64,000 nucleotides of DNA from contig BFEA01000022.1 in assembly GCA_003427395.1 (NCBI GenBank), forward strand, positions 3,385,532 to 3,449,531, given 5' to 3'. Below, piece by piece: positions 16,650-63,520 of the stretch. Every line of letters begins with the position of its first letter. The first letter of the stretch is position 1. This DNA is from Chara braunii (taxonomy: Eukaryota; Plantae; Charophyceae). The notes below the pieces were generated by a model. It had not been told where the DNA came from, did no database searches, and saw only the letters and a list, made by a program, of their open reading frames with translations. The position numbers and the translations under genes were made by a program.

Positions 16650-16657
16650 AACTTCTT

Positions 16658-18560: not shown

Positions 18561-18671
18561 CAGGGCGAATGTCCGAAGGCATGCGGCCTGGGGGCCCCCC
18601 GCAACCGTCAGGCCTCCAAAATGGGGCCCGTGTGCAGGCTCAGCATGGAACATCCCGCCCTCCTTATGATG

Positions 18672-39987: not shown

Positions 39988-40021
<34 letters not shown>

Positions 40022-41786: not shown

Positions 41787-42130
41787 TCACAACCGCGCCC
41801 ACACTCGCGCGGGTAGGAAAGGGCTTGCGTGCACTGAGTTGAAGCTCGCGCGCGCTGGATTAACACTCGCGTGGGGCAGGAAAGAGCTCGCGCGCACTGA
41901 GTTAAAGCTCGTGCGCGCTGGATTGACACTCATGCGGGGCAGGAAGGGGCTCGCGCGCACTGGGTCGGACACCGCGCGCACTGGGTCGGAGCTCACTCAC
42001 ACTGGATCGGAGGTCACACGCACCGGTGCGAGCGCGTGTGCATTGTCAGGGTGTTCGCGCGCATCACCAGGGGAGGTCGCGCGCATTGTCGGGGGCAGTC
42101 ACGTGCGCCTGCGCGCACCCGCGCACAGCG
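41787..42130. repeat. GC-rich tandem repeats (GCGCGCACTG modules, ~60- and ~21-bp periods)
   Basis: Seen directly; resembles a transposon subterminal region. Confidence 0.7.
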
Positions 42131-43341: not shown

Positions 43342-43391
<50 letters not shown>

Positions 43392-43587
43392 AATCCCAAC
43401 GCCCATCCCCCAACCCCTACCGGGCCAAGACAAACCCGGGAAACAGCCCGCTCTGACCACGTACGCGGGCCCTAAATTTGAGTACGCGCGAATACATATG
43501 CGACACGTATGAGCATACGTGCATACGCGTACGCACGTATGAGGAGCCCGCGTACGTGTACGTCGTGCTACCCAGCTAACTTGCACC

Positions 43588-43922
43588 CTGTGTAGCACAC
43601 CGAACATGTTCGGAGCTTTTCCGAACGTCCGAACATGTTCGGATGTTCGACCGAACATATTCAAAAAAAAAAAAAAAAAAAAAACTTTGTTTTTTGGTTT
43701 TTGATTTTTCACTCGAGTTTGGTTACGAATTTGACCATACCTCCAAGGCAAACGTTGTTTGTATTATTATTTTACATAACATATATTTTTTTCAGATTTT
43801 TTTGAGAATTTGTTTTTTCCTTAAATATTTTTATGTTTGCATTCAGAGAGTTTCGGCGCTCGTTCGCGTTCGGTCCCGAACGTTCGGGTTCGGTCACCGA
43901 ACCCGAACAGGATGCTACACAA
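43588..43922. mobile_element. MITE with CCGAAC subterminal motifs and 8-bp TSD, hAT-like
   Basis: TIR TGTGTAGCA/TGCTACACA; CTTGCACC at 43580-43587 and 43923-43930. Confidence 0.8.
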
Positions 43923-45416
43923 CTTGCACCATCTTTGTACTGATATTGTTGGCAGTATATGAATATATATGTTTTACAATTATAATATATAGAGGGAGTA
44001 TGACCAACACTGAAAAATGCATAAATACATTCTTCGCAAATGCAAAACAAAGTTCCTAAGTATTATACACTAAGACAGTACAAATAAAGATAAAAGGTAT
44101 ACTGTTCATCTCATTTTTATATAAACTTTCATCACTGCGAGTTCTATCGATTCTGTGTCCCAGTCACAGACCGAATTTTAAATACTTTCTACTGTCATTT
44201 ATTCAATGAAATCATAGAAGAACCACAAATACATATACCAACGAATGTATTAAGAAAATTAATTGTCAAATACACCATTACATAAAGTTTTTGTTGGTCG
44301 GTACAACAATTGTTATCATATGCCTCGCTGCAGCAACTACACACTCTAAATGCAATGTTCGACAGTGGTTGTTTGAGATGTGAAAACGGTTTGTACATAA
44401 GACACAAAATACTTCTAATTTGGGAACACACAAACATAAGACTCAAATGATAAGAAGAAAAGCAAAGTCCATTACTCATGCTCGCAAATAAGTTAAAAAA
44501 CAAAAGTTTCATCATCGTGTGCCGCCACCTCAAACTGTTATGTTTTGTTTCACTACGAAAAAAAACGCTAAAATAAACTATTGTACGTTCAAGATTTAAT
44601 CATGTCTACTAATACGCACTTTTTTTTTTTTTTTTTTTTTTTTTTTNNNNNNNNNNNNNNNNNNNNNNNNNNNNNNNNNNNNNNNNNNNNNNNNNNNNNN
44701 NNNNNNNNNNNNNNNNNNNNNNNNNNNNNNNNNNNNNNNNNNNNNNNNNNNNNNNNNNNNNNNNNNNNNNNNNNNNNNNNNNNNNNNNNNNNNNNNNNNN
44801 NNNNNNNNNNNNNNNNNNNNNNNNNNNNNNNNNNNNNNNNNNNNNNNNNNNNNNNNNNNNNNNNNNNNNNNNNNNNNNNNNNNNNNNNNNNNNNNNNNNN
44901 NNNNNNNNNNNNNNNNNNNNNNNNNNNNNNNNNNNNNNNNNNNNNNNNNNNNNNNNNNNNNNNNNNNNNNNNNNNNNNNNNNNNNNNNNNNNNNNNNNNN
45001 NNNNNNNNNNNNNNNNNNNNNNNNNNNNNNNNNNNNNNNNNNNNNNNNNNNNNNNNNNNNNNNNNNNNNNNNNNNNNNNNNNNNNNNNNNNNNNNNNNNN
45101 NNNNNNNNNNNNNNNNNNNNNNNNNNNNNNNNNNNNNNNNNNNNNNNNNNNNNNNNNNNNNNNNNNNNNNNNNNNNNNNNNNNNNNNNNNNNNNNNNNNN
45201 NNNNNNNNNNNNNNNNNNNNNNNNNNNNNNNNNNNNNNNNNNNNNNNNNNNNNNNNNNNNNNNNNNNNNNNNNNNNNNNNNNNNNNNNNNNNNNNNNNNN
45301 NNNNNNNNNNNNNNNNNNNNNNNNNNNNNNNNNNNNNNNNNNNNNNNNNNNNNNNNNNNNNNNNNNNNNNNNNNNNNNNNNNNNNNNNNNNNNNNNNNNN
45401 NNNNNNNNNNNNNNNN

Positions 45417-45466
<50 letters not shown>

Positions 45467-45473
<7 letters not shown>

Positions 45474-47155
45474 CCCTCTTCTACAAAATTATACCTGCAG
45501 AATGTGATTAGATAAAACATGTAAAGGTACCACAATAAAAAATAAATAGAACTGCATAATAAACAAATAAGCACACATATAGACATATTTAGAAATAGTA
45601 TTTTATATATATTTATATATACATATGTAAATACATATATAGAAATACCTACACAAGCGTGACACAATAGGTGCATATGACACAAATATGAACAATGTAG
45701 AAGCTATATAACACAGAACGTAGCAGACAAATCACCCACTACAATTAAATTGTCGGCACAAAAATTTGCACAAACGGGTTATGGGACCATATACTGCACA
45801 CTCTGCGGCACAAATAAGAACTCCACACATACCAGGACATAAACATAAAAATAATAATAATAATTAAAAAACTTAAAAAGTGAAAAATACTACAGACTAA
45901 AAAATGTCACACAGACCCAAAGGCCAAAAACGCCCGCGCAAAAACGGACAAACAGGTCTGCAGATCACCACCATGTCAAAACGACAAAATGAAAAACGCG
46001 CACGACAACCCAATCCGCAAGATGACTGCACGCACACGCCGAAGCGATAGCAGGAAAAACGAGACGACACACATACACCACACAGACGAAACGCCAACAT
46101 CGCCTCAGGACAAAACATATCTAAAGATACAAGCTCGGAGACCTCCATAGCCAGTCCACGATACAACAATACAGACAAAACCAAAACAAGACAAAGACTT
46201 AATGACACAAAAAAGTATGGCAAACGTGACCCCCCAAGGCAACTACCCCCTACAATTGCATCCTTTTTTTTTCCCCCTATGTGCAAACATACCAGAAATG
46301 AGACTTTAAAAAAAAAACCTCTGCAATACGCCATACTTACCCCATGCAAGAACATCGCCCTACTCCACCTCACCTTACCCACCATGCTGCAAAACACACA
46401 TACATACCCCACTCGCGGGTTCACCCTGCGCCCCCTTCCATGGCCTGGCACACTGCACACGCTACTTATATCCCTTCACACCCATACACCTCCTCCTTTG
46501 NCCCTGCGCCCCCTTCCATGGCCTGGCACACTGCACACGCTACTTATATCCCTTCACACCCATACACCTCCTCCTTTGCTTGAGCGCAGGACTTGCCGCA
46601 TGCTAGCGGCTTGAACTATACACGCCGCTGGCGGTGCTGCATACCGCGCGTGTAAGAGAACAACCTGGCACGCTTAACCGGTCGTTCGGCTGACAGGGCA
46701 CTCGGCTGTGCCTCTGATTCTGCGCTTCATATAGTGTTGCGCCTGACTTCTCACCAACCTTCAGCCAATCCAGCTATGGCGATGACTGATGCGACGACTT
46801 CACCAGCTATGACCACTCAGGTATGGACAGTCTATCCAAACCTCTAATTGGTGGTTGGTTTCCTATAAAAAAAACCGTAACTATTACACCCTTACCCTTA
46901 TGCCAACAGGAGCCTAATGACTAATACCTCTGATGAGCTGCTATGGATGCTAGGCGGCGAAAAGCGCGCTTAAGGGCGTGCACCCCCCCTATGGTTGGGT
47001 CCTCAAACCCTCTCCTAACCCCTGCTAACCTGCTAACGCTAATCCTAACTGCTCCATAAATCTTACACATTGTTGTGTGAATACTGTGTGCGACTAAAAG
47101 GACTAACTGGCTATGTCTATTGTCTCAATTCTTGGGATAGCTGTGTTTTTACACA
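45467..47155 (+). repeat. 5' pseudo-LTR of the PLE
   Basis: Direct repeat of about 60289-61872. The left boundary abuts (CA)n and a gap. Confidence 0.92.
46925..46985 (+). ncRNA. Minimal type I hammerhead ribozyme, intact core
   Basis: CCT-CTGATGA(46930-36)-GCTGC..GCGGC stem II-GAAA(46959-62)-palindromic AAGCGCGCTT stem III-TTA cleavage triplet-AGGG stem I. Confidence 0.85.
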
Positions 47156-47979
47156 AACCCCCCCACAAGCTCTCCCAGATCATTGATCCTGTTGCTATGG
47201 ATGGGGTCGAATCCCCACCTCTTTAGACTATGCCAACTGTCCAATCTAACCAGTTCGAAAACACCACAGGAACACCAACCTAACACTACCTCTATCTAAC
47301 TCCCCAATCTATCTAAGAAACCCCAACTCCCACCCCCCACCCCCCACCCCCACTGCCCGCAGCCCTCACACCTGCATACTACATTTCATTCTCTTACTTA
47401 AACTTTCGCGGACTATCCCTTAGCTGCTCGCTTCACGCTAAAACTACACATATTGCTACAAACACTACGTAATTAATACTCATAATCATGCTATACAGAA
47501 ACACACAAAACCGCGCGTACTAGACTTTAAACAACGGAAAAACCGTACTGGATGTTCCCCTCTTGATACCCTGAACTACTACTTAGATCCTCGATTCTCA
47601 ATAATTAAAATTTAACCAGACGACGTCCAACTATAATATTGCAATCCAATCGTCCAAAAATTTGCACAAAAGATCTCATACACACGCTATTAATACTATA
47701 CTTCACCTAACTATACGAGGCTATCACCTCCCACCCTACAACCAATTGCTCATATTAAACAGCACACCACATATGTGGTACGGATAGATGGACAAGACTT
47801 ACATAGCCACAAGAATGATGAACTCACATATAGTAATATACAGAGTATTCACCCTGCTAACTAATATGACGTACGCAAGGTATTTGCTATTAGGTGGATA
47901 ACCATTGACATGATTACTAATTTTTATATGGAATTTCTTAAAATTCATCCACACCATTATGAGCTAACGTATTTATCAC

Positions 47980-49870
47980 GTTACATAAAAAGGAAATGCG
48001 ACAGGAAACGTCGAAACAGGATTTGAAATGAAATGGTTGTCTTGTCTATACCACATACCCGCTGCGCTCATGGACGTTGTTTTGAATTTTTTTTTGAGAT
48101 CTTGTTATGATGGTTTATCTTAAACGTTTCTTAAAATATTGCAATAAGCACTTCAACTCTCGGCTTCTATGATTGGTATATTGTGTGCAATCGCCACTTC
48201 AACCTTCGGTTTTCCTGCTGGTATAATACTATGGACCGTTATTACACTGGATCATGGATCGTAATGCTTTCCTGTCAAAACAATAATTGAAAGGAAATCG
48301 TCGTCACCTCCATACCACATGACCGCTACAGGTCTGATTTTTTCTGCGGTATTCACATTGTGATGTACTATCTTAATTCTTCCCTAGCTCTTACAAAGTT
48401 CACTTCAACTTTCAGACTATAACGTTGGTATAGTACTAGGACTATCAGCAATAATTGCCTGTACTTGTCTAATGCTCGTAATTTCTTAAATCCCGGATAA
48501 TATGGCTAATACGATTACGGACGAACGATTATCCGTAATATCAAAAATTTAAAAGTCGGATTTCATATGACTACGTGGGCACCATTCTTTGACGATCAGT
48601 CATGTGTCCGCCATGTATTGTTGACACGTTATGAAAATATATATTGTAGTTTTTTACAATAATCGACTCCAATTTAAAGAATCTTGCATGCTATACTGAA
48701 ATTATATCCTCTCTCTACGAAGTAATTCCGAGCGTATTAACGTTATTACCACAGTACATAAAAAGTAAAATTGTGCGACAGAAAACGTCGAAACAAAACT
48801 TGAAAAAAATAATTGTCCTGTCTATAACACATACCCAATGTGCTCATAGACGAAAAACTCCTTTCTTCTGAGATCATATTGTGGTGGTTTATCTTAAACA
48901 TTTTATTGACTATTGCAATGGTCACTCCAGCCTTCGACTTTTACGTTGGTAAACCTTGTGCAAAGGCCACTTCAGGTTTCGGGTTCTTACGTTGGTATAA
49001 TGCTATGGACGATTATTACGCTGGATCGTGGTTCGTAATGTCTTCCTGTCGAAATAAGGAACTCATCGTCACATCTATGCCTCTAGCCCGACATAAGTTT
49101 GATTTTAACTGTCGTAATCATATTCTGATATATTATTTTAACGCTTCTTTAGCTTTTGTAAGGGTCACTTCAACTTTCAGTTTTTCTACGTTGGTATATA
49201 TATCTGTACATTCCTAATCTCGTAACTCCTTAAATCCCGGATAATATAGCTAAGACGTTTATGCTTGAATGATTATCCGTAATATCGACATTTTTTAGAC
49301 GGATCGTATGGACTAGCACCAATTTATACGATGATATGGCTAAATACGATGAAGCCCGCACGATTAGGCCCATACGATTTAACACACACGTAAATCTTTT
49401 TTACGACGGTTCTTTCTGTTTTTTGGTTGATTGTAGAAATCAGCAGTAGTTCTGAATGCAACACTGTGGATTTTGGCTTGCGATGGATCGTAGGGACTTT
49501 CAACATTTTTTACCTATACTTGTTTAATCTCGTTCCTTTTTCCACATAATATGACTAATACGATGTAGCCTGTATAAGTTTCTGTAGCATCGGTAGGTCA
49601 TACAAAAGACTATAGGGTCTCTCAACAAACACACGGATATGTTATGGTTCTGCCTTACAATGGATCGTTGAAAATTCCAACCAATTATACTCGTACTTAT
49701 TCAATCTTGTATTTTCTTCGTTCCCATATAAATTACCTAATATGATTAATGCCCGTATCAGTGCATATAATACCCAAGACAGTGACAGTATACACGGTGA
49801 ATCGTAGGATCTAACAACAAATTATATAGTAATACGACTAAAATATTATTTAGCCTGTATGATTAAAACC
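47980..49870. repeat. Degenerate internal repeats of the PLE (~775-bp duplication plus shorter modules)
   Basis: ACATAAAAAG...GCGACAG(G/A)AAACGTCGAAACA at about 47983 and 48756; recurring CACTTCAAC...TGGTATA and ATATGRCTAATACGAT-like motifs. Confidence 0.8.
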
Positions 49871-51269
49871 CATAAATAGAACTCTTGTTGTTGTACACAT
49901 AGAATTAATGGCACCATCACCAACGTATACCCATACTTGTTGATCACGAATGGGATGCCTAGTACGACTTAGCCCGTATGGACAGCTGCAGTATCCAAAA
50001 GATAGGCAAGAATGGGAGAGCTTCTGTTTGCCATTAATAACTTTGATTCACGCTCTTTCGAAATCCGCACGGTGGTTCACTTACATAGGGCGCGCAACTG
50101 CGCCGAGGTTCAAATTAATAATACCAATACGTACTTACGATTATAGAAAAAGGCAATGATAGTCTATCTCCGACAGGCATATACACACCGTCCTATGAAC
50201 AAACCCTCTCACACACGATTGCTGGATATGCATGAGATTAGTTAAACGATACCTACCCTCAATATATGTGTGACGTACATCTACTCATGAAACAGACATG
50301 CTTAATGATTCTCCAAGACTATAAACGTATGATACGTCCGGGTATAATAATAATTAATTAAAAAAACTATAGAGTACCCCAATAAATACGTTCTAAGTAA
50401 GCACCCACATACGAAAGCGTATCTGCCCACACGGATAAGCAAAACCGTACATGCACAAATGAGTTTCTCCCGATGCACATCTACGAAATTACCCACATTA
50501 GGTATGCTCAGTACACATGGAGTTTTTTTAATAAAAATAACAATACGAACCTCTATTCCGTATACAGAATACTGGAAGCAATATCGATAGCAAAAGGATA
50601 CATCCGCTTCCACCTTGCTAATGTATGTTTAAGGAGTGTACATAAGATTTAGCACACAAATAAAGATCTTCTTCGAAAAATTAAAACCTAAACCATAATT
50701 TCATTAATAACAGCATCATAATAAGATCCTTTATTAAAGGGTACATGTTTTCTTACTACATTTGGACAAGCGCCGAAGACGACATATTAGAGAAAGAAAT
50801 CATATACACAAGTCTGCACATATACACATGTCTGCACATATACACATGTCTGCAACCTGCCGTGCAAACCAAAAGACACATTCCAATGAAATCTTCAAAA
50901 ATTAATAGACATAGGCTCGCTAACTAAACGTTCGGAACACAACAAAGAAAGATCGTCTGATATAAACATGACATAAAATATACAAATATACACACAAAAT
51001 AAAAACACTCAAAAGACTTCGCATTCCGCAAAAAGTAATGAGATCGTTCAAACCATCACAATGACTAGACCTCCGATTACCTATTGCAAAAACGCACAAA
51101 CCAATTCTCAATCTCTTATACGAACGATAGTAAGCAAACAACCGAAAACGAAACACTGCGCACCCACATAACCTTTTGCAACGTATAAAATACGCCAGAT
51201 TCAGCATCACTTCTCCACATGCCCAACTTGCTCCAGCTATATCTCACATACTATAGCTACCCTGTCCCC

Positions 51270-52400
51270 CTCTTACGCACATATCTACGATCCGACATCC
51301 ACTAGATCCCCCGCTAATTAACGATCCACATACCAACCAAGCTCTTCCTGCTTGTAATACCCACACAACTTCGTTGCAGGAGCTTGGAGATAAAACGGGA
51401 TCCATTCCAAAAAACGATCCGAAACACCATCCACGATGCCTGACTGACCTCAAAGTAAGCAGGCCCTCTCTCAAAAGCGGATCACTATCACGCAAAGCAT
51501 GCACTCAGCCATTGAAGGGCAACCCAGTACGCAGAGCATATAACCTTTCTACCATTCATAACCATCCCCTATGCTCAAAACGCCGGCCATATAGCTACGC
51601 CCGACCAATGGCGCTTCCGACACAGCCTCCCACTCGACAAAATCAATCTGCTTCTCCGCATGCTCCTGAAGTAGATCACTCGTTAATAACCCCACCATCC
51701 CCGCTATCACATCCACCTCCCCGTCAGGAACTTCATTCGGGATATCCCTTGATGCCTTCGTCACGAACACAGTTACTTCGCAAAGCAAACCATCCCAATA
51801 GCCCAGACACATGCACAACTTTAGAACCAATCGCCCATCCGTTGTAACACGGTAATGACGAACGGAGTTACTCGTCACCCGCAGGCTATACCTAAAATCC
51901 CTACCACAACCATCACCCCGACGATGACGGAGCTCCTGGATCTCAACCGTCTTTCCGTGGACCTCACCCACACATGTGGTAACTACATCCATAGCTGAAC
52001 TAAGATATATCACACTTGTGTCATAGGAAAAACACCGACTCCCGCCCTATCCGCGTGACAAGTGTTAACGGATCTAAATTGCCTCCCGCTCCTCGGTCAC
52101 TATCAGGATAACTTCCAAGGATTGTGAGGAGCCACACTTCCGATCACGATCGAATGATTCTTTCCCCTCACTTTGCTTCGCGATTCACACGGATAGTCAG
52201 TACCACTTGGTCGATTAACAGTTTGGATCGACGGACCAAGATTCGCCCCACGAACTAATACACATGGAGAGAACAAATAACCACCCACAACACAATAGGC
52301 TGGCTGCACGCTACCGCGCACATAAGAATCCGCATCACCATAGCTAAACAAATAACAATGATACTGGTTAGCGACACACACCTCCAATTTATACCCATAC
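51270..52400 (-). pseudogene. Possible decayed antisense ORF inside the PLE
   Basis: Protein-like minus-strand ORFs 52103-52387 and 51549-52013 with in-frame continuation past stops; no recognisable domain. Confidence 0.35.
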
Positions 52401-53495
52401 TTCCACTAGCCTAACTTGCCATTACCACGCACGTATCCCCCCAAAAAAAACACTCGCTAAAAACAAAACGGTTAGCAAGCCCGCAATTTTTTTTTAACCC
52501 CCCCCCCAAAAAATAGCCCAACCAACGTAGAAACCCCGACTATACTGCCTACCGAGATCCACAATAAATAATAAGCCAAATAGCAACCGCAAAAACAGCG
52601 CAAAAAAACAACAAACAAAGATAAGATCTATATGTACAACTACAAGTAGATAACTTCCGAAACAGGGTACCTACACTTAGACAACCCTACTCCTACATTC
52701 AATACATAAAAGCCTATCCGGAAATCATAAATACAGATAAAACTACAGATAATTACTCAACGATATTGCTTTCTATCTATTTTCCCCCCCCTTCTTTTTA
52801 AAGAACATCCACAAACAATTTAACTACTAAATATTTAAAATACAATATTAAAACGCATATGATCGGTTCTCTAAAATTTGAGATAAATAACAAATCAAAT
52901 TAATTAGCAAATATGAAAACTAAAACTAAAACTTAAACCAAAAAAAAAAAAAAAAAAAAAAAAATCATTCTGAAAATATATATTTTTTTTCAATAATAAA
53001 ATAAACATAATAAATAAATAATAATCTTAAATATGATGATAAGTGTAATTTTCTAAGAACATGCAAACCAAAAAATAATTAAAAACAATCTTTGTAAAAC
53101 GGAATCTTAAAGTTAAAAATTAACAGTAAAATACAAAACGGTCACTAATTGATAATGACACCACCCGTTATAACATTGCACAACCCTAACCTCTAGTGCA
53201 ACTATAAGGAGCACAAACCAGTGGCATGGACGCGCTAAACTCACTCTTGACACCCTTTAACCATTCTTCACATACCAAGTCCACCATACACCCCCCCCCC
53301 CTCTTTTGCACATACACACTCATATACCACACACACAAGGCATACCATAACTTAGAGATATACATAATACGGCCTCGCAAGGTACACACATCTGCCCTTA
53401 CTCTACTTCTCGCCTTCTCCTAATCAGAATCCAAATGCAAGGGACCCCATAACAATCGGAAGCTCAGACACATTTAACTAAATTAATAATCGGAT

Positions 53496-56376
53496 ATGCC
53501 TATACGACGCTATAGCCCCGTGGACATGCTGAAGATTGTGTCAGCAGAATATACCGCCTTGCAACTAACTCTGATTACATATCCGAAACGTGTGCAGGAT
53601 GAAGATAGCATCCTCATGGGATGGCACCCGGAGCTTGTTGCTGCCATCAGACCCTTCTCAGCACTGCGACCACCCATAGTACACTGCCAGATCGCTATGC
53701 TTGCTTTCCCTACAGATGTCTTACTGCAGGTATATGAAGCTACGCTGGGACGAGCTCCATTCCTGATCGAAAACCTCTCCTTCAGCGATTGGGCATTGCT
53801 TGTCCACGTCATGCAAAGCAAGCCACAGAAGCTGGACGCCAAAATTCAGAACTTTGCAAGCAACATCGTGGATTCCTGCAGAAAGGCAGCTATCGAGAAC
53901 AGAGAACTGAACCTTATCACAGCCAAAGCTGAGAAGGTCATTCTCGAGCTACATGGATATGATTCTTCACACCTTGATTCCGCAAGACAAATCTCCATCA
54001 CCGAGAGAATTGAAACCTTCAGCGAGACCTACATCAATCGAATGTCACTCTCGCAGGCCGAACTTGAGTACTTAAGGAAGAAGGAGACCGAACGAAGGAG
54101 CAATGCACACACTGAGATTACACCACTCACAAGAGACGCAGGGCATAAATATGCTAAGAATAGCCTATTCTTACCGCTGGCATTAGCACCTGGACAAAGA
54201 AGGTTGTGCAACGCGTCCATAAACGACTCTGGAAGCTTGACACCTTCAACTACACTGCGCCTATCAGCATGGAAGCATACATGGCACTTGCCGGGATCAC
54301 AGACGCAGAAGTAGATAACTGCCGCACTGCTGCTAGGAATGACACTATCTACTTTCCAGCGACTAGAGGCGGTTTAGACGCAGAGTTCCTGCCGATTGTC
54401 AATCTCGAGAAGGGGAAATGCCCAAAGGGACCGCTCCTCCATCAAAAAGGCATCCCGAAGTTCCCCGCAGACCTCTCTGAGCTCAAAACGCTCTGGAACG
54501 CAGGGAGGCCATATCTGACGTGTGCATACACCGGATACGAGAAGAACTTCACATGGGTCAACCACATGATCTGGTACGTCATCGGAAACCTGGACAAGAT
54601 TGACCCACATGCTCCATCGGACAAGATCAGGATGCTTGAATTCCAAGCACTCCTTCGCACGACATGAAGAAAGTCGATACTTGCGCAGATCTCCTTCATC
54701 TTCATGAGAGAATACATGATCAAGATCGTGAACCTTCTCACATAGAACAGAATGATCTCTGCAGAGGAAGTACTGGTGTACGAAGACTTTAGGAACGTGC
54801 CATTCATGCACAAGTTCATTGCTGCACTGCTCCCTGGCATTGAAGGGCTCCTATCGCAATCGGCAAACGCAAGGCGCTGCGCAGATGTTGAAGACAATTC
54901 GCTGAGAAGATGTAGACAAATGAGGCTCGGCAGCACGCCAACCTCAAATGTGTCGCTCACCACACCGGTGCAAACGACAGCCACCACTCCAATAGAGCGG
55001 ACAAACACAGGCAGCACACACACAAGACCCATTGGCACCACACCTAGCAACATGCTGGTAACCAACAACACACCATGCCGAACTATTCCCACACTTGCGC
55101 CGACAACAACCATCACAAATGGACTGCAGCACACACGATGCCGCAACACACATGCAGACTAACACCACAACATAACACAGCGACAAACACACCGTATCGA
55201 AGCACAACACCCGTGAGCCTGAGTGCCACAGCAAGTACAGTTGTCCACGCAATACATAGCACCGAGAACAGCGTAACACCCAACGTCAACTGCAACACTG
55301 CACCCGCGCCACAAGGACACACACCCGTAACTGACGCAGGAACCTCGAACAGACCAGCAATAGAAGGCTTCGCTCAGGTACAGACAAGAGGTAATGCCTT
55401 TGCCATTACTGCTGCACAGCTCGCAGCACGACAAACCAATGTAGCCTCCACTGGCAACGCCACCCTCACAATCGCCCCCACTGCTGCGCAACCTGCAACA
55501 AGACAGACCAACATAGCACACACTAGCTACACACCACTCGTGAACAACCCAACCACACCACGTACGACACACAATGGAGCTAACACTGAACCCGGGTTCA
55601 CAATGTCACTTCCGACACACCTAACCACATACATGAATAACCAAACTAACACAGCCTGCACTGATAGCCAAAGACAGGCTCGCCGGCGAAAACAACTTCT
55701 TAGTATAGCCATGAATCCCCTTCCAGCTGAGGTCAGAAGGAACCGCAGAAGAGGCAACAGAACACAAAAAGTTCATCCTCTTCAGGAAGGGATGCATACC
55801 AGAAGACAAACAAGAAGGAAGAAGCCGCAGTATGATGGAAGACAGCCAGACATACATGAAGCCTTCCTGGCACAACAGCTACGACACCCAATGGTTGCAG
55901 CTCACTAATAGGCACTATCACAAGAAGCGTCTGGAACAACGACAGTCCAAGCACAGACAAGCCCTCCGATGCTGCCAAGAGAAGATCGAGAATGGGCGCC
56001 ACGCCCAGACCAGATCCTGGGACAATGGACGAAGAGGGGCACAACTGCGGTAATGCCCTCCTCAGAACAGCATGTCGCAACAGACCTTGAGGTTATCCAA
56101 GTCGGCAGTTGTGACATCAATGACGGAGAGAGAAGACAATTCCCCATCACAATCAGCTCACCATCACCAGGCACCCCGATCCGTCCAATCTCTGCCATCG
56201 ACGCCTTGAGAACGAACTACGGAGCTAGCAGCGTGAATTCTTCACTGCTCCGAACGAACAGTGGAAACATGGCGCACATGACCCAGTCACAATCCTCGGA
56301 GGAGTCCTGGAAGCGCGTCTGTCGGAGACTCAGCCCAGAGTACCAGTACAACTTTCCTAGCATCGCTAGAGGCTAG
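53496..56376 (+). pseudogene. Decayed accessory ORF of unknown function (~960 codons reconstructed)
   Basis: Five consecutive ORFs (53496, 54206, 54752, 55075, 55969) join with two frameshifts and a few point stops. Globular-looking N-half, Thr/Pro/Ala-rich linker, Arg-rich patch. Confidence 0.7.
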
Positions 56377-57869
56377 CTCGACAGGGAACTGCAGTAGATT
56401 GTAGAACGAAGACTGTCATTTTAGCTCGCGCAGGCTTGGTTACCTATAGACATATGAATTATTTCCAACCCTTATGAGGATTTTTATTGACAAGAGAACG
56501 CGCTGATTAACGTCTTGTTTAATAAAAGATGGCACGCGGCTTGGGCCGTTTCCACAGGCTCAGAAATACTGATAGATTCCGGCTACTTTATTCTTGGTTG
56601 ATAAGCATTCTTAATTTTGTGGTTCTTATCTGCTGAGTACGTAATCCGGACTATCCACATCACATTCCTAGCGTACCTTAAAGCCTTTACTACAGATAGT
56701 AGCATCAGATCGCTAATACATCAGTAGTAAACCAAAATAACGAGAGCCCGGTTTGCGACAGTTTTTAGAACTTGCAAGGCAGGTTTCTTCATTTTTTAGG
56801 TGGTTACATTCTTGTCCTCTTTTCCTCTCTTAAGAACAGTAGAACGCTTGCGCATAACAACAACTGGTTAACCGGCTGAGAAAGTCATCCTTCTAATAAT
56901 AATAGTTCTTGCAGCACTCTGTTTGGGCCATGTACACGAACTCAAACAGGACTGCTAGTTCCCTGCTACTAACCTATAAATTGGTTGATTGGGTATCTAA
57001 TGTGCTTGCTTTACCTTTTTTTCATTGTCTTATAATTTCTTTAAAAGAAGAAAATTGCCGCTACTCCAAAACCCCTTCTGATAACTGGGTAAATAATAAG
57101 CATGCAACTGTGAAATGCTTGCTTTCATGGCTCCCCATTAAAATGCCACCCCCCGTAGCTAGAAAACCCAAATGTTATATTTCTTTCCTCGCCCCACAAA
57201 TACCAGATATCATCAAAACCCCCTCGTTACATCCTACTCCCCTAAACAACGGTAAGGAAAAGATAACATTGACACAACAGCTATTCACAGGACATTGACT
57301 CAAACTGGAAATGATCGTACTGCTGGTCTTACTACCCGTAAAAAAAAGTTGGTTCCACACAGTCCGGCACATCAAACATGAACTTTGTGAACGCAACTTC
57401 AAGTTACAAAGCTTAATTCAACGATTATGCATTAACTAAAAATACATAACTAAAACTATCACAGCTAAAGAGAATACCCTCCCAAAAAGTATCAGATCCC
57501 CAACCCCCCCTAAATATATGCTCAGCACAAACGCAGATACAACTAGAACTATACAATTTACCTCCTATAAACTGAGTTGTATGCACCACTCCCCAATAGC
57601 TCATGCATTGCAACCCACCATAAAGACTGAGCTAACATTTACATCCTGCTACCTTGCCACTTATTCCAAGCCAGAACAAAAATAACTAACAATATAACAA
57701 CAGACAACCCACGTTCAAGACATACACCTCCCCCATACCAGACTGTCCTGCACCTACCATGACGGCTAAACCATTTGCTCGATACCCTAATCGATAAACC
57801 CGCTAGCTCAACCTATGCTTGCCTTCCTATGATGCTTAGCAGAACCATAACACTATATGACTGTCTCTT

Positions 57870-59991
57870 GTGCAGGCACATCGACTACAGACAATGGAGG
57901 ACAGGAGACTTGGTTGGAGATCTAAGATGGAAGCAAACAAACACGTCATCTCCTGCCACTATGTTAACAGATTAATGGACCGATTTAAGTTCAAAAATAT
58001 TTTCCGGAACATACTACTCAAGCACAACCTGGAAGCCGCACCGACTCTGGAAAAATTCACATTCTCCTGGAACTATAATGATCACATCGCCAAAACGCTG
58101 TACAAACTTGCAGCAGTCTTCCGAGACTTCACCCTGACAACTTGGATAGAAGAACTACCGGAAAAATGTTATTGCCAACAGCCAAGATATAAGGAATTCT
58201 CCAACAAACTTGCTGCTGACCTACTACCGGAACAAGAGACACCACACGTCACAACACTGGATCTCAACATAACTAATAACACCGAACTACGAAACATAAT
58301 GAAGAAAGGACTGAACCATATCCCTACCCCTACACCGAACCCTGACGACGTAGTTACAACAGCAAGCAACGTGTGGACACAATTCAGTCTTTCCCTCGAA
58401 AAACACGGTATACCTTTCAACACCTCACAAAAACAACAAGCAAAAAAGAACTTCGACAAAATAATCAAGGAAAACCTCGAAAACATAACAACACACAAAG
58501 TAGTAAGCATACATGATCATCCAATCAAAAATGAGATTAACTTATTGACAAAACACTTCTACATATCTGTGACAAAGCCCCCAACACCATGGTGTTTTCA
58601 TGCATCAACCTCATGAGATTGCTGACCCTACAAAGGTTAACTAGCCCAGACTTCGAAGCACACTCAATAACTGTCACTGAGCTACTGCAGAATATTAAAT
58701 ACCAACTAACAGTAAAATTCCCAGACATCCCAATTGGGAAAATGAGACTCCCCTACTTATTCGCTACATACAAGAAACACAAGAACTCATTCCGCCGGCT
58801 AACAAATGCAGCGGATGTCATCTCGACGCCATTGGCAGACTTAGCAGCAGCAGTGCTTGGCGCCCTAATCCGAATGGTCAAAACACATTGCGGCATTACC
58901 ACACTGTAAACATATGCACAAACGGGACTCAAAGTCCCCTACTGGTGGCCCATAGATTCAACCCCTGACTACACATACAACCTGCCAGATGTCGTCAACT
59001 TGGTATTCTCCGCGGACATCACAAGATGCTACGAAACAATACCTATTGACGATAGCCAAGACGACCTACCTGCAGCCATTCAATTCTTCTGCAAACTAGC
59101 ATTCAGACAGGCTAGGAAAACCTATGGGAGAAATGTTGAACTTGCATGCAGAATCTACAACTACAAAGGAACATGGATTTCTACATGCGAATGGTACATA
59201 AACCCACCAAACGGTCATCTAACTATCAACGAGAACATTATTAAGGAAATCAACAACTGACTCATTAAAAACGCTTACACATCCCTCGGATGCAGCATCT
59301 GAAGACAGGTTCTCGACATACCCATGGGTGTTAGTTGCTCATCTGTTTGGTGCAAAATATACTTTTTCAAGTATGATACAAATTTATGAAGAAATTAACA
59401 CATAAATGCAACAGACAACTACTACCCCTATTTCAACATGTCTTCCGCTACTTCGATGATTTCCACATACTAAACAACCCCAGAATCCACGAATTCCTAA
59501 ATCCAAATATAACCAGCCCACGCAGTCGTTACTATATATACCCCTTACACCTCATTACGTTAAACAAACAAACCACATATAAAATCCAAACAAATGGTAA
59601 CAGCATCGGGATACAAGCAAACTTTCTGAACACAACCTTAACCATCACAAACCTGCAAACTGGGCAATACACAACAAGAAAATTTGACAAGAGAAGGGAA
59701 CTGGGCTTCCCCATTACACGTTTCATACAAGCCAACTCAAACAGACCGCTTCAGCAATCGCTCAACCTTCTAATACCACAGATCATCACAATCATGACCA
59801 TTGAAACAGAAAACGCGCACGCTGCAAAAGAAATCAAACTAACGTTATGCTCACTCCAAAATAATGGCTTTAGATTACACAGACTACTGGGCATCGCAAA
59901 GAAAGTGCTAAAAAATCCCCCGAACTACCAACCCTTTCGTTGCAACCCGGATATCGTACTACAACTGCTGTTATTAAAAATACAGAACTAG
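57870..59991 (+). pseudogene. Penelope-like reverse transcriptase, Naiad/Chlamys-like, frameshifted (frame may extend upstream to about 57145)
   Basis: HVTTLDLNITNNTELRNIMKKGLNHIP; RLPYLFATYKKHKNSFR; YWWPIDS; FSADITRCYETIP; RQVLDIPMGVSCS; FRYFDD; IYP; ANFLN; FDKRRELGFPITRF, in PLE RT order. Confidence 0.88.
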
Positions 59992-60288
59992 TTGCACACA
60001 ATGAATAATAACTAGAACGCAAGCCAACCACGGGCATAATAATAGTAAAAATTATAAATAAACCTTCGGTGTGTGTTAGCCAATTAAACTGGCTTGGTAC
60101 GGATGGAGGACCTATCCCAAATGGGGTAGGTCCACCATCCACCCACCATCCATGGACCTACCCCACTGGACCTCCATTACGAGGGAAAGGGGAGGGACAC
60201 ACACACACACACACATACACGCACACACACACACTCGTACATTAGTCCTACAGACATACTCTTGCACACACACACACACAAATATACA

Positions 60289-61869
60289 CTTCCAACCCTC
60301 TTCTACAAAATTATACCTGCAGAATGTGATTAGATAAAACATGTAAAGGTACCACAATAAAAAACAAATAGAGCTGCATAATGAATAAGTAAGTACACAC
60401 ATAGACATATTTAGAAACAATATTTTATATATATTTATATATACATATGTAAATACACATATAGAAATACCTACACAAGTGTGACACAATAGGTGCATAC
60501 GGCACAAATATGCACAATGTAGAAGCTACATAACACAGAACGTAGCAGACAAACCACCCACTACAATTAAATTGCCGGCACGAAAAACTGCACAAACGGG
60601 TTATGGGACCATCTACTGCACACTCTGCGGCACAAATAAGAACTCCACGCGTACCAGGACATAAACATAAAAAAATAATAATAATTAAAAAACTTAAAAA
60701 GTGAAAAATACTACAGATTAAAAAATGTCATACAGACCCAAAGGCCAAAAATGCCTGCGCAAAACCGGACAACAGGTCTACAGATCACCACCATGCCGAA
60801 ATGACAAAATAAAAAACGCGCACGACAACCCAATCCGCAAGATGACCGCACGCACACGCCGAAGCGATAGCAGGAAAAACGGGACGACACACATATGCCA
60901 CACAGACGAAACGCCAACATCGCCTGAGGACAAAACATATCTAAAGATACAAGCTCGGAGACCACCATAGCCAGTCCACGATACAACAATATAAACAAAA
61001 CCAAAACAAGACAAAGACGTGACCCCCCAAGGCAACTACTTCCTACAATTGCATCCCCTTTTTTTTCCCTTATGCGCAAACGCACCAGAAATGAGACTTT
61101 CCAAAAAAAACCTCTGCAATACGCCATACTTACCCCATGCAAGAACATCTTCTTGCTCCACCTCACCTTACCCACCATGCTGCAAAACACACATATACAC
61201 CCCACTCGCGGGTTCCCCCTGCGCCCCCTTCCATGGCCTGGCACACTGCACACGCTACTTATATCCCTTCACACCCATACACCTCCTCCTTTGCTTGAGC
61301 GCAGGACTTGCCGCATGCCAGCGAGCTTGAATTATACACGCCCCTGGCGGTGCTGCATACCGCGAGTGCAAGAGAACAACCTGGCACGCTTAACCGGTCG
61401 CTCCGGCTGATAGGGCACTCGGCTGTGCCTCTCATTCTGCGCTTCATACAGTGTTGCGCCTGACTTCTCACCAGCCTTCAGCCAATCCAGCTATGGCGAC
61501 GACTGATGCGACGACTTCACCAGCTATGACCACTCAGGTATGGACAGTCTATCCAAACCTCTAATTGCCGGTTGGTTTCTTATAAAAAAAGCCGTAACTA
61601 TTACACCCTTACCCTTATGCTAACAGGAGCCTGATGACTAATCCCTCCAATGAGCTGCTATGGGTGCTAGGCAGCGAAAAGCGCGCTTAAGGGCGTGCAC
61701 CCCCCCTATGGTTGGGTCCTCAAACCCTCTCCTAACCCCTTCTAACCTGCTAACACTAATCCTAACTGCTCCGTAAATCTTACACATTGTTGTGTGAATA
61801 CTGTGTGTGACTAAAATGACTAACTGGCTATGTCTATTGTCCCCATTCTTGGGATAGCTGTGTTCTTAC

Positions 61870-61872
<3 letters not shown>
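60289..61872 (+). repeat. 3' pseudo-LTR of the PLE
   Basis: Direct repeat of 45467-47155, followed by (C)73 and (CA)n. Confidence 0.92.
61642..61702 (+). ncRNA. Second hammerhead copy with a mutated core (CCAATGA)
   Basis: CCCT-CCAATGA-GCTGC..GCAGC-GAAA-AGCGCGCT-TA-AGGG; loop GGGTGC is complementary to downstream GCACCC. Confidence 0.75.
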
Positions 61873-61943
<71 letters not shown>

Positions 61944-61946
61944 ACC

Positions 61947-61978
<32 letters not shown>

Positions 61979-61980
61979 CC
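61871..61980. repeat. (C)73 followed by (CA)n at the PLE 3' junction
   Basis: Seen directly. Confidence 0.95.
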
Positions 61981-63520
61981 CCGGACGATAGTTGGCCAGT
62001 AGAAGCAACAACTTTTTTTTTGTGGCGTAAATGGGATATCAGGTTTAAGACTCTTGTTGAAGATGCATTTGTGAATAATAGTGATTACACATTAGAGCCA
62101 GACGCAATGGTAGACGATGATGAGATCGTGATCACAAACGCTAAATCTGCAAAATTTTGGAAACGCGCACAACAGGTAATTAGAAACGAAAAAGGTTTAG
62201 AGCAAAATGGTCAAAATCGTTACATTGTGCCGTTTACGTTGTACTCCGACAAAACATATGTAGATGGTCACATGAAAACGACATCATACCCTTTGATGTT
62301 ATCACTCGCCGATAGACCGGATCGTGCAAAACTGCTAGCTTACTTCCCGATCTTACATCCGCTTCCTCACATTCATGGATGAACAAGTAAGGCGTCCGCG
62401 TTCATTCGTCGCAAAAGGAGTCTTTTCCATGAAAGTCCCGCTATCATTCTCAAGGAAGCAAAAAAAATATCTCACGAAGGAATGCAAATGCATACCTCAA
62501 GGTATGAAAATATTACGGTTCATCCAGTGTTGTTAAATTACATACAAGATCATCGTGAAAGGTGTCTTTTGACACTTGTAAAGAACGGACGCTGCCCAAC
62601 GTGTATTGTGCCCACTGACAAACTTCATGAGCACATGGATTATAGTACTTTAGCGAGAACAGAGAATGTGGACCGCAGTATTTTGCACGACATTCATCAT
62701 GAATCTGATGAATCAACACATCATGAAGCGTTAGGTTTCGCCAATGAATGCGGAATGCACTATAATATTCCTTTCAATGGCCTTTGGGGGTTTTATCAAG
62801 GTTCTTCCAACAACGATTTGATGTTTGATTACCACTATGCGCAACAACCAGATCGAATGCACACCATAGATCATGGGATATTTGAATATATGATCGAAGG
62901 TGTAAAAACGTTTTGCAATTCATTCGACCGGGCATCCGCAATGCAAGGTGAGTTAAATGCTCGTCTCAAGCAAATCAGCCTTAGAGTCCGTCGTTCGTTC
63001 CAAAAGTTAATGCTACCTGTCGCCACAGGAGCCGATTTCTTCACTCGCGAAGGGCGATTCGAAGAAAAACAATATTGAGCTGTCATGTCAGTTATATTGT
63101 TTATTGTTCATAATTTTGTGGACAGCGCTTAGGGACGCGACCTTGTCAAATGGTTTGATATGTTTCTAGAGTATTTGAGGAGTATGTTTCAAATGACGAA
63201 ACATACGACACAATCGCTTAACATGTGTGAAATCTTCTAAAAGAATTTATGGATTTCACAAATCTTCGATTCAGCCATTTACAAAAGTCAAATTGGAAGA
63301 TAAAGAAAATGCATGACATGAACAAGTTCAAAGCAACAGTGTTGTGGTCAGAATTGCCAAACACATTTGTTGCAGACATTTGGGAACATAACCACATCCG
63401 TCTTTGCAAAAATCCTTATCATGCTTCAAATCGCCGAAACCCTTTGCGGCAAATGGTGAAACACATTGTACGTGCAACAACACTAGAATAACACGTATCA
63501 AAAGTGAGGGTGAGACGTCG
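61981..63520 (+). pseudogene. Plavaka-family transposase, N-terminally truncated, with stops and a frameshift
   Basis: PFTLYSDKT..YPLMLSL, LLAYFP, LFH..IL, VHPVLLNYIQDHRERCLL..RCPTCIVP, PDRMHTIDHGIF, KKMHDM...WEHNHIRLCKNPYHASNRRN..QM match the Plavaka motif series. ORFs 62020 and 62482 are in the same frame. Confidence 0.82.

What the first reader, a model, noticed from the sequence alone, without database searches (positions are those of the whole stretch)
45417..61980. Giant (~14.7-kb) multi-ORF Penelope-like retroelement with ribozyme-bearing terminal repeats
Seen: two ~1.6-kb direct repeats 14.7-14.8 kb apart, with no LTR hallmarks, each containing a hammerhead motif. Between them lie about 6 kb of repeats and ORF remnants, a ~960-codon unknown ORF and a PLE RT. 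Known: PLEs insert as pLTR-ORF-pLTR with hammerheads in the pLTRs and are usually a few kb with one ORF; very large multi-ORF PLEs are best known as bdelloid Terminons (Athena clade). Inference: this is an independently enlarged, cargo-carrying Naiad/Chlamys-type family in a green-lineage genome and the best candidate here for an undescribed system.
Basis: partly seen in the sequence, partly recalled or inferred. Interest (0 to 1): 0.9.

Follow-up and report, generated by a model that had tools for sequence, protein, structure and literature searches.

The report
Decayed giant endonuclease-less Penelope-like retroelement
This is an old, broken and apparently silent copy of a 14-16-kb retrotransposon family of the alga Chara braunii; it belongs to the endonuclease-less 'PLE-X' type of Penelope-like elements described in 2021, its 'unknown' large ORF is that type's known N-terminal extension, and the one unreported feature is a small conserved gene on the opposite strand.

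Summary
The two direct repeats are real (45443-47164 and 60265-61881, 91-95% identical, 14.7-14.8 kb apart). The left repeat abuts an assembly gap. Only the upstream hammerhead keeps an intact core. The '960-codon ORF' and the RT are both broken by frameshifts and stops.

The genome is Chara braunii. Other copies, fetched through ORF-A, RT or asORF protein hits, keep the same gene order. Where both repeats are assembled, they lie 14-16 kb apart. The large unit is therefore a family trait, not an accident of nesting.

The RT has the CxC, DK(A), HVRT and FRYxDD motifs, has no GIY-YIG domain, and is homologous to Selaginella 28S-rDNA elements. The big upstream ORF is homologous to their N-terminal extension carrying the CxCX1-8C motif. 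This matches the 'PLE-X' (PLE-X1_cBra) type of Craig et al. 2021, including the hammerhead and the (CA)n/(C)n ends. It is not a Terminon and not an undescribed system.

Two things are not in that paper's main text:
- The unit is about twice the published Chlamys size range.
- A roughly 147-codon antisense ORF lies 1.5-2.3 kb upstream of the big ORF in 7 of 7 copies and is under purifying selection. Its predicted fold is GNAT-like at moderate confidence.

No RNA reads map to this copy. First readers of this scan noted similar elements on other pieces of this genome.

The parts
44647..45416 (.). Assembly gap (770 N) directly left of the upstream repeat. It hides the true 5' limit and the upstream flank.
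45417..45467 (+). (CA)25 at the start of the upstream pLTR. It corresponds to the internal (CA)n at 60197-60264.
45443..47164 (+). Upstream pLTR: the 3'UTR of a 5'-truncated tandem copy. It is 91-95% identical to 60265-61881. It includes a 78-bp duplication around the N at 46501 that is probably an artefact.
46926..46976 (+). Type I hammerhead with an intact core. CUGAUGA is at 46930-46936, helix II at 46937-46958 and GAAA at 46959-46962. Helix III is the palindrome AAGCGCGCUU at 46962-46971. The predicted cleavage site is after A46972.
46977..47164 (+). Conserved 3' terminal segment. It is rich in CTAAC and ends ...TTACACAAACCCCCCC.
47165..47640 (+). Conserved 5' start of the full-length unit. 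It is collinear with L001, L002 and L003 directly after their pLTR ends.
47965..49294 (+). Two units of about 0.77 kb in tandem (72% identical). L001 and L002 have tandem units of similar size at the same relative place.
51552..51992 (-). Antisense ORF (asORF) of 147 codons from a conserved Met to a conserved stop. The frame stays open as far as 52046.
51993..53495 (.). Interval between the divergent starts of asORF and ORF-A. It is A/T-rich, low in complexity and poorly conserved. A role as a promoter region is inferred.
53490..56376 (+). ORF-A, the PLE-X N-terminal-extension protein, here broken into 5 pieces. The conserved CxCxxC/W-DH domain lies around 54164-54664. A low-complexity T/P/A-rich stretch and a basic tail follow. 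The stop codon is conserved.
56377..57860 (+). Non-conserved spacer between ORF-A and the RT. It is single-copy at 85% identity or more.
57861..59991 (+). PLE-type RT ORF, broken. The motifs CxC (KCYC), HVTT, GLNHIP, DKA, LPYL..YKKHK..RRLTNA, A (FSADIT), B (IPMGVSCS, with stops), C (FRYFDD) and SNRP are all recognisable. There is no GIY-YIG domain.
60110..60264 (+). Conserved inverted repeat (GGGGTAGGTCC...GGACCTACCCC) followed by the internal (CA)n, at which the pLTR begins.
60265..61881 (+). Downstream pLTR, the element's own 3'UTR and terminus.
61643..61693 (+). Downstream hammerhead copy with a mutated core (CCAAUGA).
61871..61979 (+). (C)77 followed by (CA)18 at the 3' junction. This is either a microsatellite target or a tail.

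Best explanation
The window holds one old, mutated copy of a Chara braunii family of endonuclease-less Penelope-like retrotransposons of the 'PLE-X' (Chlamys-related) type.

Shown: the family unit is about 14-16 kb and has this order.
- A conserved 5' start.
- Roughly 4-5 kb of fast-evolving non-coding DNA with ~0.8-kb tandem repeats.
- A ~147-codon ORF on the opposite strand (asORF).
- 1.5-2.3 kb of A/T-rich spacer.
- ORF-A (~1000 codons; this is the PLE-X N-terminal extension with its CxCxxC motif, and it has its own conserved stop).
- A ~1-1.5-kb spacer.
- The RT ORF, with a conserved ATG.
- A hairpin and an internal (CA)n.
- A 1.7-2.5-kb 3'UTR with a type I hammerhead ~210 nt before the terminus ...ACACAAA(C)n.
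The upstream repeat is the 3'UTR of a 5'-truncated copy that starts at the internal (CA)n. It is a pLTR made by partial tandem insertion.

Inferred, from what is established for PLEs:
- A transcript running from the upstream pLTR through the element is cut by the hammerheads, probably acting as dimers through the palindromic helix III, to give unit-length RNA.
- The RT copies it by target-primed reverse transcription.
- With no nuclease of its own, priming would use free 3' ends at (CA)n/(C)n tracts, which can pair with the ACAC/C-rich RNA terminus.
- Annealing of the internal (CA)n to the target would give the recurrent truncation point and the tandem arrays.
- asORF would be transcribed from the spacer it shares head-to-head with ORF-A, and it encodes a GNAT-like-fold protein of unknown activity.

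This particular copy is dead and unexpressed.
For: Organism and family:
- ORF-A pieces hit 11 or more C. braunii proteins at 58-83% identity and 9 more in a second search.

Collinearity in other copies:
- ORF-A then RT at 66-79% nucleotide identity (most pieces 70% or more) in L001-L004. In L007 both are detected only at protein level (47-59% aa). In L008 only an ORF-A fragment is present and no RT is detected.
- pLTR pairs: L003 857-3288 with 16632-19057 (91%, 15.8 kb); L002 14.0-14.4 kb; L008 15.9 kb.
- The same pLTR-end to 5'-start junction occurs in the window, L001, L002 and L003.
- L001 and L002 are collinear over about 5.5 kb of the 5' region.

RT identity:
- 110 homologues, including a Selaginella cluster.
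- The motif alignment shows CxC, HVRT, GLNHIP, DKA and FRYxDD.
- No GIY-YIG by Pfam.
- The Selaginella locus lies in a truncated 28S gene, as the paper describes for PLE-X.

ORF-A is the N-terminal extension:
- BLASTP to P0126 gives E 8e-15 across RPY.KC.C..CE..W.D..WY, and to the Chara protein P0023 E 1e-28.
- C277, C311 and C313 are invariant, and C316 nearly so.

Two sense ORFs:
- The ORF-A stop is conserved and conservation ends after it.
- Conservation resumes about 25 nt before a conserved ATG of the RT.

Hammerhead:
- It is the most conserved non-coding block.
- 94% of cells pair in the proposed structure, against 53% or less when the partners are slid.

Ends:
- (C)n then (CA)n follows the terminus in the window, L001 and L003.
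- pLTRs start at (CA)n.

asORF:
- It is the only frame without stops in all 7 copies.
- Codon-position mismatches are 43/28/83 (p 1e-7), 17/12/31, 37/26/54 and 42/29/61.
- Cross-subgroup BLASTP reaches E 1.5e-12 in this frame only.
- Six annotated Chara proteins match. One of them, CBR_g31911, lies head-to-head with the ORF-A gene CBR_g31912.
- It is absent from the 7.6-kb sister family in L005.

asORF fold:
- The AF2 model has pLDDT 74 and pTM 0.73.
- Nearly all top hits in three libraries are GNAT acetyltransferases: VIA Z up to 7.4, Foldseek probability 0.9-0.99, Atlas TM 0.48-0.55.

Decay and silence:
-.
- 0 reads in two RNA runs, and 6 partial sub-95% reads in a third.

Literature.
Against: - I could not read the paper's supplementary consensus. 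I therefore cannot show that this family is PLE-X1_cBra itself rather than a sister family, nor whether its length and the antisense ORF were already annotated there.
- No RT phylogeny with named Naiad, Chlamys, Athena or Coprina references was possible.
- Most of the 5' region (47.6-51.5 kb) aligns with no other copy except within close subfamilies, so nested insertions inside it are not excluded for this copy.
- Only 7 copies were examined, several with assembly gaps, and two of them were picked through asORF itself.
- The left flank is an assembly gap, so no target-site duplication or true 5' boundary can be read.
- No transcript evidence exists for any part, so splicing between ORF-A and RT (as the paper suggests for Selaginella) is not excluded.
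- The GNAT-like fold rests on a moderate-confidence model, Z values below 8 and no sequence-level match. The acetyl-CoA loop motif Q/RxxGxG/A is not conserved among copies.
Confidence: 0.85

Rival explanations
1. Composite locus. A PLE-X element of ordinary size (ORF-A plus RT, about 7-8 kb) sits beside unrelated nested or captured DNA. On this view the 5' 6 kb and the antisense ORF belong to another repeat or to a host gene fragment, not to the mobile unit.
For: 47.6-51.5 kb has no detectable similarity to most other copies. 48-50 kb lacks the C>G skew of the rest of the element. A sister PLE-X family in L005 has a 7.6-kb unit without asORF. A weak asORF-like fragment lies on its own in L005 at 20458-21056.
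Against: All five copies found independently of asORF have it at the same place and on the same strand. The pLTR-to-5'-start junction is shared by four copies. pLTR spacing is 14-16 kb in four copies. L001 and L002 are collinear across the whole 5' region. Non-coding DNA is expected to be unalignable where coding identity is only 70-79%.
Confidence: 0.08
2. Terminon-like giant element. On this view it is an Athena/Coprina-type EN-minus PLE that attaches to telomeres and carries cargo genes, as in bdelloid rotifers.
For: No endonuclease domain is present. A hammerhead lies next to a CTAAC-rich segment near the 3' end. The element is large and has more than one ORF.
Against: The RT has the Naiad/Chlamys-specific CxC motif, and its extension is homologous to the Selaginella rDNA PLE-X. 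The 3' ends abut (C)n/(CA)n rather than telomeric arrays. The copy is flanked by a DNA-transposon remnant, and the paper reports a genome-wide distribution. It has only three genes, at 14-16 kb versus up to 40 kb for Terminons.
Confidence: 0.02
3. Assembly artefact. On this view the 14.7-kb spacing and the repeat arrangement come from mis-scaffolding of a repeat-rich, gap-ridden region.
For: There are five N gaps between 39 and 45.4 kb, one of them touching the repeat. There is also a duplicated 78-mer around a single N.
Against: Independent short-read contigs match 54000-54590, 54910-59293 and 59458-59999 with no differences. One of them spans from the ORF-A end through the spacer to the RT start. 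No contig listed there covers 54591-54909 or 59294-59457. The same architecture recurs on six other scaffolds.
Confidence: 0.03

Closest known systems
PLE-X families (PLE-X1_cBra in Chara braunii; PLE-X1_sTam and relatives in Selaginella), the EN-less branch of Chlamys PLEs (Craig, Yushenova, Rodriguez & Arkhipova 2021, PMC8557442)
   Same: Same host species. No GIY-YIG domain. CxC motif before the RT and DK without G. A canonical hammerhead in the 3' region/pLTR. An N-terminal extension with the CxCX1-8C motif encoded upstream of the RT (homology shown). (CA)n/(C)n at the insertion ends. Interstitial, non-rDNA location in Chara.
   Different: The unit is about 13 kb without the pLTR, against the 3.3-8.2 kb quoted for Chlamys. 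The extension is a ~1000-codon ORF with its own conserved stop, 1-1.5 kb from the RT, rather than a ~330-aa exon a few hundred bp away as in Selaginella. A conserved antisense ORF and a ~5-kb repeat-bearing 5' region are not mentioned in the main text. I could not check the supplement.
Chlamys EN+ elements (for example Chlamys-1_cBra with Josephin, and Chlamys-2_cBra with a gag-like ORF and a hammerhead)
   Same: Shared RT signature motifs (CxC, DK), pLTRs, microsatellite targets and tandem repeats that inflate the length. Accessory domains or ORFs are common in both.
   Different: There is no N-terminal GIY-YIG domain, no Josephin/RING domain and no zinc-knuckle ORF. The accessory gene here is on the opposite strand.
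Terminons (Athena-clade giant PLEs of bdelloid rotifers)
   Same: EN-less PLE RT at the 3' end of a long unit with extra ORFs and hammerheads.
   Different: A different RT clade by motifs. No telomeric repeats or terminal location seen. Far fewer genes.
Retrotransposons with antisense ORFs (for example L1 ORF0, and plant Ty3/gypsy elements with antisense accessory ORFs; from general knowledge)
   Same: A conserved small ORF on the strand opposite to the RT, inside the element's 5' part.
   Different: A different retroelement class. To my knowledge no antisense gene has been reported for a PLE, and a search of the paper library found none.

Membership tests
Penelope-like elements (PLE) | PLE-type RT with the N-terminal GLN.IP and DK(G) motifs and RT motifs 1-7 plus thumb | tested here: met
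   The alignment with 9 homologues shows GLNHIP, DKA, LPYL..K.HK..R.LTNA, F.ADIT.CYE.IP, GIPMG..CSP, FRY.DD and SNRP. Pfam RVT_1 scores only below threshold.
Penelope-like elements (PLE) | Pseudo-LTRs formed by partial tandem copies | tested here: met
   The upstream repeat equals the element's own 3'UTR. The same holds in L002, L003 and L008. L003 also shows a third 3'-end fragment upstream.
Penelope-like elements (PLE) | Hammerhead ribozyme in the pLTR | tested here: met
   The core and three helices lie at 46926-46976. The block is conserved in 8 copies, 3 of them with an intact core. Rfam models do not detect it. Cleavage activity was not tested.
Penelope-like elements (PLE) | GIY-YIG endonuclease (EN+ clades) | tested here: not met
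   No GIY-YIG hit in any ORF of the window or in intact relatives. The RT ORF ends right after the thumb. This places it among EN-less PLEs.
Chlamys / PLE-X (Craig et al. 2021) | CxC motif upstream of the RT | tested here: met
   KCYC in the window aligns with the CxC of all homologues.
Chlamys / PLE-X (Craig et al. 2021) | N-terminal extension with the CxCX1-8C motif, homologous to the Selaginella rDNA elements | tested here: met
   ORF-A against P0126 gives E 8e-15 over the motif. The cysteines are invariant. P0126's locus interrupts a 28S gene. The window copy itself has lost two of the cysteines.
Chlamys / PLE-X (Craig et al. 2021) | Insertion at (CA)n / (C)n microsatellites | tested here: met
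   The 3' ends are followed by (C)n(CA)n in the window, L001 and L003, and the pLTRs begin at (CA)n.
Chlamys / PLE-X (Craig et al. 2021) | Placement in the Chlamys clade by RT phylogeny | not testable with these tools
   No named reference sequences were available. Only motif evidence and homology to Selaginella could be used.
Chlamys / PLE-X (Craig et al. 2021) | Length 3.3-8.2 kb without pLTRs ('mostly') | tested here: not met
   47165-60264 is 13.1 kb. pLTR spacing is 14-16 kb in 4 copies. This is a descriptive range, not a defining feature.
Terminons / Athena | Athena-clade RT, telomeric location, reverse-complement telomeric repeats at the 3' end | tested here: not met
   The RT has Chlamys-type motifs. 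The ends are (C)n/(CA)n. The right flank is a Plavaka-type transposase remnant. The CTAAC-rich stretch is only suggestive. Chromosome position could not be tested.
GNAT acetyltransferase superfamily (for asORF) | GNAT fold | tested here: inconclusive
   The AF2 model (pLDDT 74) hits almost only GNAT proteins, with Z 5.2-7.4, Foldseek E 4e-3 or weaker, and TM 0.48-0.55.
GNAT acetyltransferase superfamily (for asORF) | Acetyl-CoA binding motif Q/RxxGxG/A and sequence-profile membership | tested here: not met
   No Pfam or PDB profile hit. The GxG-like stretch occurs in some copies only.

The most novel reading that the evidence does not exclude
In one Chara lineage of EN-less PLE-X retrotransposons the unit doubled in size and acquired a gene of its own on the antisense strand. 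That gene encodes a GNAT-fold (acyl-transferase-like) protein expressed from a promoter region shared head-to-head with ORF-A. It has been kept under purifying selection through the family's diversification because it helps the element, for example by modifying chromatin or a host factor. If so, this would be the first antisense accessory gene reported for a Penelope-like element.
Probability: 0.3. Interest if true: 0.65.

Novelty: new variant of a known kind. Interest (0 to 1): 0.45.

Why it matters
PLE-X elements pose an open question stated in the 2021 paper: how do they integrate genome-wide, or into rDNA, without any recognisable nuclease? This family lays out the complete parts list for that question:
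- the CxCxxC extension protein as a separate ORF;
- the RT;
- a conserved hammerhead;
- a conserved hairpin plus internal (CA)n at the recurrent truncation point;
- (C)n/(CA)n junctions.

It also adds an unsuspected third gene on the other strand. If that gene is functional, PLEs join LINEs and LTR elements as carriers of antisense accessory genes. For genome annotation, the practical point is that dozens of 'hypothetical proteins' of C. braunii are pieces of this element, and several gene models are chimeras. This covers the ORF-A family, the asORF family and fused models such as CBR_g37275.

Tried and rejected
- Rfam at gathering threshold and at E<=10 found no hammerhead. The motif was confirmed by pattern, alignment and pair counts instead.
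- The minimum-free-energy fold of the 81-nt hammerhead region is no more stable than shuffles (z 0.07), so thermodynamics alone gives no support.
- Pfam on all window pieces found no RT and no domain in ORF-A. The only hit is a sub-threshold GRF-like zinc ribbon over the CxCxxC motif (17 bits against a cutoff of 27). This is a weak lead toward ssDNA binding and is not claimed.
- The AF2 model of the ORF-A conserved region (pLDDT 63) had no fold match by Foldseek or VIA (best Z 4.0).
- The ESM Atlas feature search for asORF gave no usable hit.
- Gene model P0030, which fuses ORF-A and RT, looked like evidence for splicing. It spans 38 kb and joins two different copies, so I rejected it.
- RNA-seq gave 0 reads in two runs and 6 partial low-identity reads in a third. 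There is therefore no evidence for or against a 14.7-kb transcript, splicing or asORF expression. For two of the runs the tool itself calls this 'no test'.
- The paper's supplementary files are not held, so I could not compare with the curated PLE-X1_cBra consensus.
- All three homologous-protein searches returned only Chara proteins.
- The plus-strand ORF at 51257-51844 was considered and rejected. Plus frames carry 2-11 stops in the other copies.

Full report
**Observation.** The repeat finder and a self-BLAST confirm two direct repeats: 45443-46500 with 60265-61293 (91.3%), and 46502-47164 with 61217-61881 (94.7%).
- The left repeat begins at the first base after a 770-N assembly gap (44647-45416).
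- A 78-bp duplication flanks a lone N at 46501.
- The downstream hammerhead has CCAAUGA in place of CUGAUGA.

Stop-to-stop translation shows the '960-codon ORF' as five pieces in three frames and the RT as four pieces. Motif B is recognisable but carries in-frame stops. Short-read contigs match 54000-54590, 54910-59293 and 59458-59999 without a difference, including one contig that spans from the ORF-A end to the RT start. The breaks within those stretches are therefore in the DNA and not in the scaffold.

**Organism and family.** The first ORF-A piece hits only Chara braunii proteins, 58-83% identical. Through these proteins I fetched other genomic copies (L001-L004). Later I fetched two more through the antisense protein (L007, L008).
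- In L001-L004, ORF-A and the RT lie in the same order and at similar spacing, at 66-79% nucleotide identity. In L007 both are detected only at protein level (47-59% aa). L008 carries only an ORF-A fragment and no detectable RT.
- Where both ends are assembled, pLTR pairs bracket them: L003 at 15.8 kb (91%), L002 at 14.0-14.4 kb and L008 at 15.9 kb.
- The junction from the pLTR end (...TTACACAAACCCCCCC) into the interior (ACAC.C.CCC.GATC.TTGATCC...) is the same in the window, L001, L002 and L003.
- L001 and L002, which are closer relatives, are collinear over about 5.5 kb of the 5' region.

The 14-16-kb unit is therefore a property of the family.

**What the genes are.**
- *RT search.* The RT piece found 110 relatives by exhaustive HMMER search, among them several Chara models and a Selaginella moellendorffii cluster.
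- *RT motifs.* The alignment shows the motifs that Craig et al. 2021 use for Naiad/Chlamys: a CxC motif (KCYC), HVRT, GLNHIP, DK followed by A rather than G, and motifs A to E. The protein ends after the thumb, and no GIY-YIG domain is detectable anywhere.
- *ORF-A.* The near-intact ORF-A of L002 (905 codons) matches the N-terminal 100-313 residues of the Selaginella protein P0126 at E 8e-15. The match covers RPYLKCVCLGCE..W.DH..WY against RPYCRCDCQGCE..W.DS..WY. It also matches the more distant Chara protein P0023 at E 1e-28. The cysteines are invariant in a 15-sequence alignment.
- *Selaginella context.* The Selaginella locus is a 5.2-kb tandem next to a 28S gene truncated near model position 1170.

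All of this fits the paper's third Chara type. That type is 'PLE-X' (PLE-X1_cBra): EN-less, with a canonical hammerhead, a CxC motif, 'a unique N-terminal extension ... with a conserved CxCX1-8C motif', relatives in spike-moss 28S rDNA, and (CA)n/(C)n targets. The 'unknown accessory ORF' is therefore a known component.

In this family ORF-A ends at a conserved stop, after which conservation collapses. Conservation resumes about 25 nt before a conserved ATG of the RT. I therefore read them as two ORFs. A splice acceptor (TGCAG|G) at that point cannot be excluded without RNA.

**Hammerhead and ends.**
- The core pattern occurs once in the window, against 0.03 expected.
- The motif is a type I hammerhead with a 6-bp helix II, a 4-bp helix I and a 3-bp helix III inside the palindrome AAGCGCGCUU. 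This is the dimer-prone design typical of PLEs (general knowledge, Cervera & de la Pena 2014, as cited in the paper).
- Across 8 copies it is the best conserved non-coding block.
- 94% of cells pair, and the only changes are compatible one-sided ones. There is too little variation for covariation. Three of the eight copies keep an intact core.
- Downstream ends are followed by (C)n then (CA)n. pLTRs begin at a (CA)n that corresponds to an internal (CA)n just after a conserved hairpin at the end of the RT region.
- In L003 the upstream pLTR follows the (C)17(CA)n terminus of yet another 3' fragment. This picture is what repeated insertion into the microsatellite at a resident copy's tail, with truncation at the internal (CA)n, would produce. 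That step is inference.

**The 5' region and a third gene.** Between subfamilies, only two parts of the 5' region stay alignable. One is the first 0.2-0.5 kb. The other is a ~450-bp block 1.5-2.5 kb upstream of ORF-A. That block is an ORF on the opposite strand.
- It is the only one of six frames free of stops in all seven copies.
- It has a conserved Met and a conserved stop.
- Substitutions pile up at third codon positions: 43/28/83 (p 1e-7), with three further pairs at p<0.01.
- The two subgroups, unalignable as DNA, still match as protein at 23-25% identity, with E down to 1.5e-12 in that frame only.
- Six annotated Chara proteins belong to it. One of them (CBR_g31911) lies head-to-head with an ORF-A gene (CBR_g31912), 2.3 kb apart.
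- The 7.6-kb sister PLE-X family in L005 lacks it.
- An AF2 model (pLDDT 74, pTM 0.73) retrieves almost exclusively GNAT acetyltransferases in PDB by Foldseek, in PDB by VIA (Z up to 7.4) and in the ESM Atlas (TM 0.48-0.55).
- There is no sequence-profile match, and the CoA-binding loop motif is not conserved. I therefore call the fold GNAT-like and the activity unknown.

The ~0.77-kb tandem units at 47965-49294 have counterparts of similar size at the same relative place in L001 and L002. This fits the paper's remark that tandem repeats inflate some families.

**State of this copy.** It is dead. The pLTRs are 5-9% diverged, both sense ORFs are broken, two CxCxxC cysteines are lost and the downstream ribozyme is mutated. 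Three oligo-dT RNA-seq runs gave essentially nothing on 54.0-60.0 kb, and the tool itself marks the two empty runs as no test. DNA word depth in the same call rises about 35-fold over the conserved ORF-A domain and 2-6-fold over the RT. It stays at single-copy level over the ORF-A/RT spacer, consistent with many diverged relatives. The tool cautions that this depth is no copy number.

**Verdict.** What may be new is the doubled unit size and the conserved antisense GNAT-like gene. Whether the curated PLE-X1_cBra entry already contains them could not be checked. First-reader notes of this scan list similar EN-less multi-ORF PLEs and other Chlamys types on other pieces of this genome. I did not test those.

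Noticed in passing
window 62020-63078 (+): Two ORF pieces match the Plavaka (KDZ-type) transposase (PF18759; E 5e-5 and 5e-10). A DNA-transposon remnant therefore forms the right flank of the element.
   Followed up: partly
window 60110-60196 (+); L002 16390-16470; L003 16500-16560: A conserved inverted repeat (GGGGTAGGTCC ... GGACCTACCCC) lies just before the internal (CA)n at which pLTRs start. Rfam gives only a chance-level mir-2188 match there. It may be an RNA or cDNA hairpin tied to the recurrent truncation point.
   Followed up: partly
window 46990-47060 and 61705-61775: A CTAAC-rich stretch (CCTAACCCCTGCTAACCTGCTAACGCTAATCCTAAC) lies right after the hammerhead and is conserved in all copies. 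It loosely resembles reverse-complement telomere-like units, as seen next to hammerheads in EN-minus PLEs. I do not know the Chara telomere repeat.
   Followed up: no
window 46424-46579: A 78-bp exact duplication surrounds a single N (46501) and is absent from the other pLTR. It is probably a gap-closing artefact.
   Followed up: partly
window 39113-45416: Four assembly gaps (502, 869, 415 and 770 N) lie within 6.3 kb, with (CA)n at the gap edges (43343-43412, 45417-45467). This microsatellite-rich stretch is poorly assembled.
   Followed up: no
L004 (BFEA01000443.1), gene 10001-48233: The annotated protein CBR_g37275 (P0030) is a 38-kb chimeric gene model joining ORF-A of one element copy to the RT of another. 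P0137 (with a CCHC knuckle) and P0144 (with WD40-type domains) also fuse ORF-A to unrelated domains.
   Followed up: partly
L005 6350-15128: A second, more distant PLE-X family of Chara (P0023). It has a 7.6-kb pLTR spacing, a 469-codon extension ORF and no antisense ORF inside the unit. A weak asORF-like fragment lies alone at 20458-21056 (minus strand).
   Followed up: partly
L006 764-9724 and 11069-14661: Selaginella moellendorffii PLE-X copies sit in a 5.2-kb tandem next to a 28S rRNA gene cut near model position 1170, with 5.8S and 18S following. This matches the published rDNA targeting.
   Followed up: partly
L002 1-8291 (-): A 2036-aa Ty3/gypsy-type gene model (protease, RT, RNase H, integrase) overlaps the upstream pLTR region of that copy. 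It is either a nested LTR element or an over-extended gene model.
   Followed up: no
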